From assembly GCF_000143415.4 (NCBI RefSeq), contig NW_003314284.1, positions 62,001 to 126,000 of the forward strand: 64,000 nucleotides of DNA, given 5' to 3'. This stretch comes from Selaginella moellendorffii (lineage: Eukaryota > Plantae > Lycopodiophyta). Below are positions 43,501 to 49,953 of this stretch, one piece after another (the first letter of the stretch is position 1; each line of letters starts with the position of its first letter). The notes beneath the pieces were generated by a model. The model worked only from the letters and a program-made list of their open reading frames with translations, was not told the origin of the DNA and ran no database searches. A program made the position numbers and the translations under genes.

Positions 43501-46500
43501 CTACCTGCGGTCCTCAAGCCAAGGTGGAATTTTCATGCCTTCCGGGCAGTCTAGCTTTTCCAGCCCGGTATCATGCTTTAATTTCGGAAGCGTTTTGGTA
43601 TTCGAACTTCTCACCTCCACGTCGTTCGATCCTCTAAATCAATATATACAAAACTGCGACTGCACCACTATTCTCCCACCAGGAGAGCTTCGCCTCTCAC
43701 GTCCCTGGCAATCTCTACCACCTCGGGTTTGCTCCTTGTCGATTCCAATTCTTGTTGAGCTGCCACCTCGCTTTTGCTCACAGCAGCACCACCTTTGCCG
43801 GCTCTTATCCTCGCCAGGAAACCTCTCACGAGAGCCTGTATTTTCGTTGCAGCGCCCTGGATGTACACGGCCTGGATCCGCTTCTCACGCTCGATGCGCA
43901 GAGTGAGAGGCAACCCCTGCGTTAATCCGAGCCAAACGTAAGTATCAAAAGCTTGGAATAGCAGCTACTTACAGTTGGTCCGATCTTATACAGCGTCAGC
44001 GTTTCCAGCAGCTCCTTGAAAGGGATTCCTTTGTTTGGAACTCGAAAACTCATCACCTCGTACTCTATTCTCATGTACCTGAGCAGAACAAAGAAAAAAA
44101 CGAGTGAGAGACAAAGAGAGATTGAGAGGAACACGCCAAACCATTGGGTCGCGTATTTGTAGCGCCGGCCCAGCGGATCACCGAGGGCGTTTACAAATCG
44201 TCGCAGCTTGTGCATGCCAATGTATCCCGTAGCACTGGACGATTGTAAAGTTAGTTCCGCAAGGACTTGAACGTAATTAAGTGGCTTACTTGGGATCGAA
44301 TGGTTCTTGGCTCCACAAGTTTCGATATGCTAACAGGTGCTCTGGCATGACCATAGAGTTCTCGTTCACAAGGCCGAAGGTTACAGCATCCAGTATGACA
44401 GCCACAAACAAGTTCATGAATATGTGGCTCCCGACCAAGACCAAGAAGGCGAAGAAGATAATCCCGCCCTCTGGATAGCCACAATCATCGCCGAGTAGTG
44501 TTTTACCGTTGGTGCAGGCGGGTGCATCAATTGTGGTATCCATCATAACGCAAGACCAGTTATCAAGAGTTGTAACCTGTAAAAGAAAAGCGAAACTGAA
44601 AGTGGTAGAAAAGCAAGCCTTTACCTGAAACACCGCGATGAAAGCGTTGACGAAAGTGCGAAAGTTGACAGACGGGCCAATGCAGGTCCCTTCCTTCATT
44701 GCACTGAAGAGTTGAAAAGCCATCCCTGCGAACATATACATGAAAATTGCGAGAAGAGCGAGTATCTCAGCTACAGTTGGCAAACAGATGAACATTGTTC
44801 GCATAATAACCCGCGCTCTCGCTACGTGAGGAATGATGCAAAAAACTCGAGCAATGTAGGCAGTGCGGCCGACATAGCCCCTCACCGTTCCCTTCTTTCC
44901 CATGAGACCAATGGCGGCCATTATGGAGAGTCCAAACTCCATCTGCCGTGCAACCTCGTTCTTATAGACCTTCCACTGGAGAAAGGAAAAACCAGGTGGT
45001 CAAACAAAAAACAATCGAGAAAAAGATGAATGAGGTACCTCGTCGCCAAGGAACTTCATCACGGATTCGAGCAGGAAATATGTTGTAATCGCACAGTGAG
45101 CCATCTGACGCCGGTCCGAAACAACTGCTGACTGGCCAGCATAGTTAGTCGCAAGTAGCCCGGAGTAGCCAAGGAGTGCGAGGATCATGCACTTTTGATA
45201 TGTCGGATTGCGAATCAAGTAGAAGCACATCCCCCGGATGGGATTGCTTGGTCGTCGAGCCAGCGGAATAGCATAAGTTTTCTGGATGATACGGTTCATG
45301 TCCCTCCACAGCTTCTGCCTCTCTGTGAGAAGAACTGCTCCAGAATTTTTTCCAAACTCGTTGATAAACACCCCGATGAAAACTCTGACGATATAAAATC
45401 CCCCGATACAGCAGAATGCCACGAAAAACAACGCGTTGACAGGACTTGAGTTCCGAACAGGCTGGTGGTCTTCCCTAGTGATGTCCATGACAGGATACAT
45501 GAAGTGCGTCAGCCAGTTGTCGAAAGTGGAGCAGACGAACATACTGAGGAGGGCATTCTGGATGTCGTCAAAGTGGAAAACGTTATTAACCCAGGCTCGG
45601 GGAACAAGGATGCCAATGTCATTAACATAGAGGCCGGTACAATATGCTCGGTGCGTGATTGTCGGGTCATTGCATTTCCAGAGAAGGCCCCGAAACTGCT
45701 GCAGCCCGATGGTTCCAAATATCAGGAGAATTGAAAATGTGAAGAGAATAACCGACACAATTGCTGGAATAGTCCGAAAAAGATTTGATAATAATGACCT
45801 CAGTCCTGTAAACCGAACCACGAAACGAAATGGCCGAAGAGAAGTAAACGCACCGACGGTTGGTATGGAAGTTTCATTCTCAGCGTTATACTTCAGAAGA
45901 ATAAGCGCATCGGTGACGAGAATAAACAAGTCCAAGATGTTGTACCAGTCACTCAGGTATGCGTCTGGCGCAAAAATAAGTCCCTGTGCAACGATCTTCA
46001 TCAAACAGTCTAGCGAAAAGACCTGCTCCAAAACAATGTACAATGTCGAGCAAAATAAGGTAAGCATGTGCTTACCACAAAGTTGATCTTCTGCAGATTC
46101 CAGATGAAATCGGGGACAATTATCGGCTCTCCATCATCTCGCATCTCAACTACGAGCCAAGTATTGATGACCATCCAAACTATCACAAACCACAAGTACG
46201 GTTTACTGCCGAGGATCTTCCTAGACAGGATCCTTATCGTGTTGCCCTCTCCAAATAGAAGAAGCGACCCTTCTCGCAAGTACCACGGTCTCTGTATGGT
46301 TGTAAGAGTTCTCTCGAGCTCTTCGTACTCCGACAGCTGGAAAGATTTCCTGTTGCTAGAGGCCCTGCTTAGATTTCTGCCAATGTTTGGACTGCTGAGA
46401 ATCTTGTCGAGAGTTATTACGGCATCTTGAAGTGCGGTCCTTGAACCCCTCCTTTCACCGATATTAGACGGAAAACCAGAAACCTGTAAAACTTGGGAAG

Positions 46501-49500: not shown

Positions 49501-49953
49501 CTCGCCTTTCTTCTTATATTCTAGAAACAGAAATTAAGGACTCTCCAAAGTCGAAAGAAGTAAAGTTACCATGAGCCTCTTGATTGCAGTGTAAGCCCTC
49601 TTCCAGTTCTTGGTTGCCGGGGAATCGGGAATCGCTGGGGCCAGTTGATCCAGTGCGGCAATCAATGCGGCAGACGAAGATGATGACGCTGCTCGGTCGC
49701 GATCCGGCGCTGCTTTGCTCACCCCATGAATCGGAGGCAGCTGATCCTCCCATGTCGGATGCCGAGCTATGAAATCGTGATCTTCTTGCGGGATGGGATC
49801 ACTGGAAGAAGTATTTCGAGGCGATCGATGAATCACTGCATCAGCTAAGCTACATTGTGCCTCCGGCGCCTACCTCTGCGTGAGCTTCGTCATAGCTTGC
49901 GTCGCCGCCTCGAGAGCGCTCATCCGCCGGCGAACTCCCTCCATGGCCGTCAT
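43501..49953 (-). CDS. Four-domain (24-TM) voltage-gated-superfamily cation channel, NALCN/Cch1-like, filter E/E/D/D, C-terminal IQ motif
   Basis: Four P-loops: VITLEGW, VTTAESW, CSTFDNW, VTTLDNW. Four S1-S6 sets, III-IV linker GAVLLTERQKLW, EF-hand-like FDPKATGYI, IQALVRGFLAR. Many short GT-AG introns. Exact start codon uncertain. Confidence 0.88.

What the first reader, a model, noticed from the sequence alone, without database searches (positions are those of the whole stretch)
43501..49953. Four-domain NALCN/Cch1-like cation channel in a land plant
Seen: a multi-exon gene with four 6-TM repeats; the junctions I traced stay in frame, except the extreme N-terminus. Several segments resemble, from memory, animal NALCN and fungal Cch1 more than CaV/NaV: domain-I turret LAYPMRFC...GGYVCPP, post-IIS6 LLERNELTDNQKKRIQ, PRAWVN..FHFD, III-IV linker GAVLLTERQKLW, APAC...DDCG. 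Established: angiosperms lack four-domain channels (they have two-domain TPC1), and chlorophyte flagella use CaV-type channels. Inference: a retained Ca2+ channel, plausibly for flagellated sperm or electrical signalling in seed-free plants. I cannot check whether it has already been described.
Basis: partly seen in the sequence, partly recalled or inferred. Interest (0 to 1): 0.9.

Follow-up and report, generated by a model that had tools for sequence, protein, structure and literature searches.

The report
Spikemoss four-domain NALCN/Cch1-related cation channel
This spikemoss gene is intact and transcribed, and it encodes a four-repeat cation channel of a kind that reviews say land plants lack; its nearest named relatives are the animal sodium-leak channel NALCN and the fungal calcium channel Cch1, but the protein is already in public databases and in one published tree.

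Summary
On the minus strand, CDS 49953..43668 has 23 exons and 22 GT-AG introns of 44-72 nt, and encodes a stop-free 1698-aa protein with four Ion_trans repeats. Spliced contigs from four studies show that it is transcribed.

The model is 98.3% identical, with identical junction peptides, to a RefSeq protein of Selaginella moellendorffii named "CaV alpha-1F-like". The pore ring is E/E/D/D, no S4 has more than three in-register basic residues, and there is a C-terminal IQ motif.

By raw similarity it resembles CaV1 more than NALCN (331 against 234 bits). Maximum-likelihood trees nevertheless put the land-plant plus prasinophyte clade next to NALCN/Cch1, apart from all CaV and NaV types (UFBoot 98-99). 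AU tests reject joining it to CaV3, CaV1/2 or volvocine CAV2. A published 2025 tree that already contains this protein agrees, but its text names only "Chloroplastida".

Homologues were found in liverworts, mosses, lycophytes, ferns and Ginkgo, and none in three angiosperm proteomes. A role in sperm or in excitability is inference only.

The scan had already found and followed up paralogues on other DNA of this genome. I rate it a new member of a known kind, of moderate interest.

The parts
43668..49953 (-). Complete coding region of the four-domain channel gene (1698 aa, 23 exons). Exons in + coordinates, 5' to 3' of the gene: 49874-49953, 49570-49801, 49396-49520, 49196-49345, 49038-49145, 48858-48975, 48684-48808, 48536-48635, 48416-48487, 48289-48355, 48132-48235, 47664-48072, 47518-47607, 47324-47466, 47034-47278, 46858-46984, 46076-46807, 45039-46022, 44625-44975, 44290-44576, 44142-44234, 43973-44078, 43668-43916
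   Evidence: Model built. Joints in contigs of 4 studies. 98.3% identity and identical junction peptides with RefSeq protein P0189. Coordinates.
48058..49460 (-). Repeat I (residues 125-432), introns included. IS4 lies at 48885-48932; the pore glutamate (TLEGW, E375) at 48341-48343. The cysteine-rich turret is LAYPMRFC...GGYVCPP.
   Evidence: Pfam Ion_trans; alignment; coordinates.
46778..47772 (-). Repeat II (residues 528-775). IIS4 lies at 47351-47395 (only R..R then K in register); the pore glutamate (TAESW, E706) at 47084-47086.
45315..46231 (-). Repeat III (residues 958-1245). IIIS4 lies at 45798-45848; the pore aspartate (TFDNW, D1177) at 45519-45521. It is followed by the III-IV linker with LLTERQKLW and no IFM motif.
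44334..45266 (-). Repeat IV (residues 1262-1535). IVS4 lies at 44811-44870 and is charge-depleted, with Cys and Pro where CaV and NaV have Arg. The pore aspartate (TLDNW, D1459) lies at 44562-44564.
43668..44333 (-). Cytoplasmic C-terminus: a post-IVS6 region conserved among the land-plant homologues, then the IQ motif at 43794-43853, an acidic tail and the stop codon.
   Evidence: Pfam IQ, 22 bits against a cutoff of 20.3, on the last exon; sequence; coordinates.
49802..49873 (-). First intron (72 nt, GT..AG).
   Evidence: Sequence read directly; contig piece ends at 49801 (table 8); junction peptide MTKLTQSDPIPQ is identical in P0189.

Best explanation
Window 43668-49953 (minus strand) holds an intact, transcribed nuclear gene of Selaginella moellendorffii, or a very close relative, for the pore-forming subunit of a four-domain (4 x 6TM) cation channel.

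The gene belongs to a family inherited vertically in the green lineage. That family has prasinophyte algal sisters; at least four or five loci in Selaginella; and members in liverworts, mosses, other lycophytes, ferns and Ginkgo. None was found in angiosperms.

In trees the family lies next to animal NALCN and fungal Cch1. This is the 'clade A' of Senatore and colleagues (2025). It does not lie with CaV1/2, CaV3, NaV or the Chlamydomonas-type flagellar CAV2.

Inferred mechanism:
- The four P-loops form an E/E/D/D acidic ring, the same ring as T-type CaV3 channels, so the pore should pass Ca2+ and probably monovalent cations when Ca2+ is low.
- Each S4 keeps at most three in-register basic residues, and IVS4 has Cys and Pro at gating-charge positions. 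Gating is therefore expected to be only weakly voltage-dependent or set by other inputs, as in NALCN and Cch1.
- The C-terminal IQ motif suggests calmodulin feedback.

Shown here: gene structure, splicing, domain architecture, pore and S4 residues, phylogenetic position and taxon distribution.

Inferred: Ca2+ permeability, weak voltage dependence, calmodulin regulation, and any role in swimming sperm, excitability or Cch1-like Ca2+ refilling.
For: Gene and expression:
- Stop-free 1698-aa model with 22 canonical short introns.
- 14 introns seen as joints in contigs of 4 studies, plus a loose end at the last intron.
- Exon structure identical to RefSeq protein P0189, with 98.3% identity.

Architecture:
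- Four Ion_trans stretches and an IQ motif.
- The EEDD ring is conserved in all land-plant members.
- S4 charge counts.
- No AID motif in the I-II linker and no IFM motif in the III-IV linker. No GPHH or Ca_chan_IQ Pfam hits, as is also the case for NALCN and Cch1. CaV1/2 hits carry both families.

Phylogeny:
- The branch separating {green clade + NALCN/Cch1} from all CaV/NaV-type channels has SH-aLRT 96-99 in the quick LG+G4 tree. It has UFBoot 98 / SH-aLRT 94 under LG+C20+F+G4 and 99/97 under LG+G4.
- The neighbourhood persists without NALCN, without Cch1, with voltage-sensor columns only and with pore columns only.
- AU tests reject green clade + CaV3 (p 3e-9), + CaV1/2 (p 2.7e-4) and + Pleodorina CAV2 group (p 2e-75).
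- The published tree of PMC12412391 contains this very protein and places the land-plant clade with Prasinoderma and Rhodelphis beside the NALCN/Cch1/Cryptista part.

Distribution:
- Marchantia and Ginkgo.
- Riccia, Sphagnum, Diphasiastrum, Ceratopteris and Adiantum.
- Physcomitrium and a second Marchantia locus.
- No Arabidopsis, Amborella or Populus sequence in the published set.
- The algal sister cluster is Pycnococcus/Pseudoscourfieldia.
Against: - Raw similarity ranks CaV1 > CaV2 > CaV3 > NaV > NALCN. NALCN and Cch1 sit on long branches, so long-branch attraction is not fully excluded.
- The tree is unrooted, so 'same side of a branch' becomes a clade only if the root lies among the CaV/NaV types.
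- The AU tests were run only under LG+G4; the mixture-model AU test did not finish.
- The pore-only tree gives weak support, 62.
- The pore ring differs from both NALCN and Cch1.
- No Mid1/FAM155, UNC79 or UNC80 is reported for Chloroplastida.
- Two printed splice joints are 5 nt off and would shift the frame.
- No electrophysiology or localisation exists, and the tissue of the RNA runs is hidden, so nothing here bears on where the channel acts.
Confidence: 0.72

Rival explanations
1. It is a plant T-type (CaV3-like) or L-type voltage-gated calcium channel, as the RefSeq product names imply, and works as a classical depolarisation-activated Ca2+ channel.
For: It has the same EEDD ring as CaV3. 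The best PDB scores are to CaV1, CaV2 and CaV3. It has a C-terminal IQ motif. The automatic RefSeq names say so.
Against: AU tests reject a clade with CaV3 (p 3e-9) and with CaV1/2 (p 2.7e-4). The branch that excludes it from all CaV/NaV types has UFBoot 98-99. It has no AID motif and no GPHH or Ca_chan_IQ domains. The S4 helices are charge-depleted. The RefSeq names differ between isoforms and alleles of one locus (L-, T-, R-type, NaV), which shows they are best-hit labels.
Confidence: 0.12
2. It is the land-plant orthologue of the Chlamydomonas flagellar channel CAV2, kept only to control the flagellar waveform of sperm.
For: The family is present in lineages with swimming sperm and was not found in angiosperms. 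Flagellar roles of algal CaV-type channels are established in the literature cited in PMC11085791.
Against: The volvocine CAV2 representative (Pleodorina, P0108) falls in a different part of the tree, and joining it with the green clade is rejected (p 2e-75). Selaginella has four or five loci and Marchantia two. Spliced contigs occur in many S. moellendorffii runs from 8 studies, which is hard to square with strictly sperm-limited expression, although the tissues are unknown.
Confidence: 0.06
3. The window copy is a decaying or non-productively spliced gene, i.e. a pseudogene in the making within an expanded family.
For: Two printed joints use donors 5 nt away from the frame-keeping ones. Odd joints are also seen: a 2023-nt skip and a 30-codon in-frame skip. 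IVS4 is more degenerate than in Marchantia or the algae.
Against: There is no stop or frameshift in 5.1 kb of coding sequence, and all 22 introns have canonical sites. The allelic copy differs by only 26 substitutions and one 3-codon indel, and keeps every junction. The pore ring and other signature motifs are intact. Only 15 of 31 joints were shown, and one variant contig uses the productive donor (table 5c).
Confidence: 0.07
4. The gene is a contaminant, or was acquired horizontally from a protist or an animal.
For: Reviews state that embryophytes lack such channels.
Against: It lies between plant genes; an 870-aa PPR protein is at 50692-53304. It has the very short introns typical of this genome. 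The land-plant sequences form one clade with bryophytes apart from vascular plants, ferns next to lycophytes, and green algae as sister.
Confidence: 0.01

Closest known systems
NALCN (animal sodium leak channel)
   Same: Both are four-domain 24-TM pore subunits with charge-depleted S4 helices. Only Ion_trans is detected by Pfam in both. NALCN is the nearest named neighbour in trees, together with Cch1.
   Different: The pore ring is EEDD, against EEKE in the nematode NALCNs aligned here. HMMER similarity is lower than to CaV or NaV. No FAM155, UNC79 or UNC80 is reported in green plants. The plant protein has a recognisable IQ motif. It is a separate green-lineage branch, not an orthologue.
Cch1 (fungal plasma-membrane Ca2+ channel, works with Mid1)
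   Same: It sits on the same side of the tree. Both have an acidic, lysine-free pore compatible with Ca2+ permeation. Both have few S4 charges in repeats I and IV.
   Different: The Cch1 ring is N/Q-E-E-E. Cch1 needs Mid1, which was not found in Chloroplastida. Plant MCA proteins complement the yeast mid1 mutant but are unrelated to Mid1; this point is from my own knowledge.
CaV3 (T-type calcium channels)
   Same: Identical E/E/D/D selectivity ring and high sequence scores.
   Different: The phylogenetic union is rejected. CaV3 S4 helices carry 6-7 basic residues per repeat in the aligned segments, against 4-6 in the window's protein.
Chlamydomonas/Volvox-type CAV2 flagellar channel
   Same: Both are green-lineage four-domain channels, and a flagellar role is one candidate function.
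   Different: They fall in different clades; the AU test rejects the union. The ring of the Pleodorina representative is S/E/S/E.
TPC1 (two-pore channel of land plants)
   Same: Both belong to the voltage-gated-like superfamily and both are present in land plants.
   Different: TPC1 has two repeats and acts as a dimer. This protein has four repeats in one chain.

Membership tests
Four-domain (4 x 6TM) cation channel superfamily (CaV/NaV/NALCN/Cch1) | Four Ion_trans repeats in a single polypeptide | tested here: met
   Pfam PF00520 with 4 stretches, E 4e-123, on the allelic protein P0189. Separate exon hits in the window. Full-length alignment to solved CaV, NaV and NALCN chains.
Four-domain (4 x 6TM) cation channel superfamily (CaV/NaV/NALCN/Cch1) | One P-loop per repeat that contributes a selectivity-ring residue | tested here: met
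   TLEGW / TAESW / TFDNW / TLDNW align with the rings of CaV, NaV, NALCN and Cch1.
NALCN/Cch1-related 'clade A' (PMC12412391) | Falls on the NALCN/Cch1 side of the branch that separates them from CaV1/2, CaV3 and NaV clades | tested here: met
   UFBoot 98 / SH-aLRT 94 under the C20 mixture model and 99/97 under LG+G4. Robust to removing NALCN or Cch1 and to using voltage-sensor or pore columns only. The published Newick places the same proteins there. The root is not inferred.
NALCN proper | Lysine in the selectivity ring (EEKE or EKEE) | tested here: not met
   The ring is EEDD; the nematode NALCNs aligned here have E/E/K/E.
NALCN proper / Cch1 proper | Orthology, i.e. nested within the Amorphea NALCN/Cch1 group | tested here: not met
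   The green clade is a separate branch. NALCN + Cch1 group together to its exclusion, with support 98/91 and 99/97.
NALCN/Cch1 channelosome | Partner subunits FAM155/Mid1, UNC79 and UNC80 in the same genome | not testable with these tools
   No tool here searches this genome. The published HMM search of 185 proteomes, which included S. moellendorffii, Marchantia and Physcomitrium, reports these subunits in animals, fungi, apusomonads, Cryptista, Malawimonadida and Discoba, and not in Chloroplastida. Its authors warn that divergent homologues may have been missed.
CaV3 (T-type) | EEDD ring | tested here: met
CaV3 (T-type) | Phylogenetic membership of the CaV3 clade | tested here: not met
   AU p 3.3e-9, delta lnL 114.
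CaV1/CaV2 (high-voltage-activated) | EEEE ring, AID in the I-II linker, and GPHH and Ca_chan_IQ domains | tested here: not met
   EEDD ring. No GY..WI motif. No PF16905 or PF08763 hit, whereas the CaV1/2 hits carry them. AU p 2.7e-4.
Chlamydomonas-type CAV2 | Orthology with volvocine CAV2 | tested here: not met
   AU p 1.8e-75 for the union with the Pleodorina CAV2 group.

The most novel reading that the evidence does not exclude
This green-lineage, NALCN/Cch1-related channel family is the missing plasma-membrane or flagellar Ca2+ entry channel of seed-free plants. It would drive sperm swimming or chemotaxis, or the Ca2+ phase of action potentials in bryophytes, lycophytes and ferns. Its loss would be tied to the loss of motile sperm in the seed-plant lineages that lack them.
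Probability: 0.3. Interest if true: 0.8.

Novelty: new member of a known kind. Interest (0 to 1): 0.55.

Why it matters
Ion-channel and plant Ca2+-signalling reviews from 2018 to 2024 state that embryophytes have no four-domain channels. This gene and its relatives in bryophytes, lycophytes, ferns and Ginkgo show that the statement holds for angiosperms only.

The family is not a CaV. It is a green branch of the NALCN/Cch1-related group. Genetically tractable plants (Marchantia, Physcomitrium, Ceratopteris) therefore carry relatives of a channel type whose gating is poorly understood even in animals.

It also gives concrete candidates for Ca2+ entry in plant sperm and for excitability in seed-free plants.

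What tempers the interest:
- The proteins are already in RefSeq, under misleading names.
- They are in the data and tree of a 2025 paper.
- Paralogues in this genome have already been followed up by this scan.

Tried and rejected
- MAFFT --auto or iterative alignment of 70-140 full-length channels timed out. I replaced it with a fast global alignment followed by per-repeat L-INS-i alignments.
- The AU test under the C20 mixture model did not finish in two attempts, so the AU tests were run under LG+G4 only.
- I took Diphylleia P0009 as a possible NALCN-sister lead, because CRuMs channels are sister to NALCN in the 2025 paper. It proved NaV/CaV3-like (719 bits to NaV1.7), so it was used only as an ordinary tree row.
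- The first word-based homologue search, with P0001, returned only 10 true hits. Repeating it with the full-length allele and with Marchantia, using the region option, supplied named NALCN, Cch1, CaV and NaV references.
- Paper searches for Marchantia gene identifiers, and for explicit reports of CaV/NALCN-type channels in bryophytes, returned nothing relevant.
- The ESM Atlas look-up gave only generic Ion_trans clusters.
- The look-up of encoding contigs on the unnamed fragment P0006 gave an SRA run id but no organism.
- I first placed the intron after IS4 at 48809-48852, following a printed joint. That shifted the frame. The donor 5 nt upstream, giving intron 48809-48857, restores it and matches RefSeq.
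- I considered a genome frameshift in IS3. I rejected it once the 62-nt intron at 48976-49037 was found.
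Full report
**What is there.** The minus strand between 49953 and 43668 carries a 23-exon gene. I removed 14 introns that appear as CT..AC joints (GT..AG on the gene's strand) in transcriptome-like contigs from four independent studies. I placed the other eight by frame and splice consensus; one of these, the last intron, is also marked by a loose end at 43972 in all four runs.

The result is a stop-free 1698-aa protein. 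All 22 introns are 44-72 nt long with canonical ends. A contig ends exactly at 49801.

The model is 98.3% identical over its whole length to P0189. [quoted passage not shown] All 11 junction peptides I checked, including every inferred junction, are identical in that protein. The 26 substitutions and one 3-codon indel fit the other haplotype of the same locus. The published tree also shows two near-identical allele pairs for this locus.

The neighbouring gene is an 870-aa PPR protein. The window is therefore ordinary plant nuclear DNA, not a contaminant.

**Anatomy.** Pfam finds four Ion_trans stretches and an IQ motif in the last exon.
- The four P-loops read TLEGW, TAESW, TFDNW and TLDNW, giving an E/E/D/D ring. 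Every land-plant homologue I aligned keeps this ring. The prasinophyte sister sequences have E/E/D/E.
- No S4 helix has more than three basic residues in one three-residue register. IVS4 has Cys and Pro where CaV and NaV channels have Arg.
- There is no AID motif in the I-II linker and no IFM in the III-IV linker.
- There is no GPHH or Ca_chan_IQ Pfam domain, which is also the situation in the NALCN and Cch1 proteins scanned alongside. CaV1/2 hits carry both families.

**What it is related to.** By score it looks like a CaV. Against solved structures the allele scores 331 bits to CaV1.1, 317 to CaV2.2, 283 to CaV3.2, 270 to NaV1.7 and 234 to NALCN. Repeat III alone gives the same order. Trees tell a different story.

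I assembled 71 full-length channels:
- the land-plant proteins;
- unnamed algal or metagenomic relatives from an exhaustive HMMER search;
- named NALCN, Cch1, CaV1, CaV2, CaV3, NaV1, NaV2 and volvocine CAV2 references.

I aligned each repeat separately and concatenated the alignments.

The land-plant sequences form one clade with 100% support, and a clade of five algal-type sequences is its sister. One of those five belongs to a cluster from Pycnococcus and Pseudoscourfieldia. This green clade sits next to NALCN + Cch1.

The branch separating {green clade, NALCN, Cch1} from every CaV/NaV-type channel has these supports:
- SH-aLRT 96-99 in the quick LG+G4 tree;
- UFBoot 98 / SH-aLRT 94 under LG+C20+F+G4;
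- 99/97 under LG+G4.

The neighbourhood survives four changes: deleting NALCN, deleting Cch1, using only voltage-sensor columns, and using only pore columns. Support in the pore-only tree is weak, at 62.

AU tests under LG+G4 reject three alternatives:
- green clade with the CaV3 clade, p 3e-9;
- with CaV1/2, p 2.7e-4;
- with the Pleodorina CAV2 group, p 2e-75.

NALCN and Cch1 are long branches and the root is not inferred. I therefore read this as "same side of a well-supported branch", not as proven sisterhood.

**Independent confirmation and prior knowledge.** The 2025 J Gen Physiol paper on the NALCN/Cch1 channelosome (PMC12412391) searched 185 proteomes, including S. moellendorffii, Marchantia and Physcomitrium.
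- Its sequence file contains this very protein, its Selaginella paralogues, two Marchantia loci and Physcomitrium XP_024366358.1.
- Its Newick tree puts them in one clade with Prasinoderma (100/100/1) and then Rhodelphis, beside the part that holds NALCN, Cch1, Discoba/Malawimonadida and Cryptista channels.
- The text says only that clade A includes "Chloroplastida".
- No Arabidopsis, Amborella or Populus sequence is in that set.
- The paper reports FAM155/Mid1 and UNC79/UNC80 homologues in several lineages but not in Chloroplastida.

Reviews, by contrast, state that embryophytes lack four-domain channels: Pozdnyakov 2018, Fux 2018 and a 2024 diatom review. I found no paper in the searchable library that discusses these land-plant genes.

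This scan has also met the family before. Paralogues on other pieces of this genome were followed up with the same conclusion about plants with swimming sperm (s1-355612, s1-380501). Another four-domain gene was noted about 30 kb beyond this window (s1-394772). The EEDD ring and charge-poor S4 helices of this stretch were noted too (s1-420552).

**Distribution.** Named homologues come from:
- liverworts: Marchantia and Riccia;
- mosses: Sphagnum, and Physcomitrium in the published set;
- lycophytes: Selaginella with at least four or five loci, and Diphasiastrum with at least two;
- ferns: Ceratopteris and Adiantum;
- Ginkgo, as a fragment.

All of these lineages make flagellated sperm, and angiosperms yielded nothing. 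I could not examine conifers, cycads, hornworts or streptophyte algae. The pattern so far is therefore compatible with a single loss and is not a test of co-loss with flagella. The two Klebsormidium channels in the published tree lie elsewhere.

**How it most likely works.** From established channel biophysics, an EEDD ring such as that of CaV3 gives a Ca2+-permeable pore. The depleted S4 helices predict weak or modified voltage dependence, as is known for NALCN and assumed for Cch1. The IQ motif predicts calmodulin feedback. All of this is inference.

Where the channel acts is unknown. The gene appears in contigs of many runs from eight studies. With four or five Selaginella loci, that makes strictly sperm-limited expression less likely, but the tissues are hidden from me.

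**Loose ends.** Two printed joints (48541|48487 and 48853|48807) use donors 5 nt from the frame-keeping ones. A non-canonical 2023-nt skip (46399|48423) appears in three runs. A 30-codon in-frame skip across IS3-IS4 appears in two runs. No repeat explains the long skip. Only 15 of 31 joints were printed, so I cannot say how common the productive forms are.

**Verdict.** The NALCN/Cch1 reading is right at the level of the wider clade, wrong as to its stated basis (segment similarity), and not a case of orthology. The functional idea remains open. This is a new, so far undiscussed, land-plant member of a known channel group, already present in public data.

Noticed in passing
window 41900-42620: A 100-N assembly gap lies at 42021-42120. 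The roughly 440 bases after it read like a homopolymer-inflated copy of the sequence just before the gap: the same word order, with each base run stretched. This looks like low-quality sequence kept in the assembly, not biology.
   Followed up: partly
window 46399 and 48423: Contigs of three studies join 46399 directly to 48423. This skips 2023 nt with non-canonical ends (AA..AC on the + strand). The two sites share no word of 10 or more bases. It could be a chimeric contig, a template switch or an odd isoform; I could not tell which.
   Followed up: partly
window 48907-49061: Contigs of two studies skip from 49061 to 48907 with one extra letter. Relative to the spliced mRNA this is an in-frame loss of 30 codons, covering the second half of IS3 and the first half of IS4.
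   Followed up: no
window 50692-53304 (minus strand): An intron-less 870-aa pentatricopeptide-repeat protein gene lies directly upstream of the channel gene, on the same strand.
   Followed up: partly
about 30 kb beyond the window's end (note s1-394772): Another four-domain channel gene with an EEDD ring and an IQ motif was noted by the scan on the same piece of DNA. At least two family members are therefore linked within about 50 kb.
   Followed up: no
window 54650-56526 (note s1-420500): The scan's index lists a Cry-toxin domain-I-like plant gene in this window. I did not look at it.
   Followed up: no
database names of P0002, P0151-P0155, P0187-P0189, P0108, P0286: Automatic product names are misleading. 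Isoforms and alleles of single Selaginella loci are variously called L-, T- or R-type calcium channel or sodium channel. The Pleodorina CAV2 channel is named 'Caveolin-2'. A Pycnococcus fragment of the sister clade is named 'Calcium-channel protein CCH1' in UniRef.
   Followed up: partly
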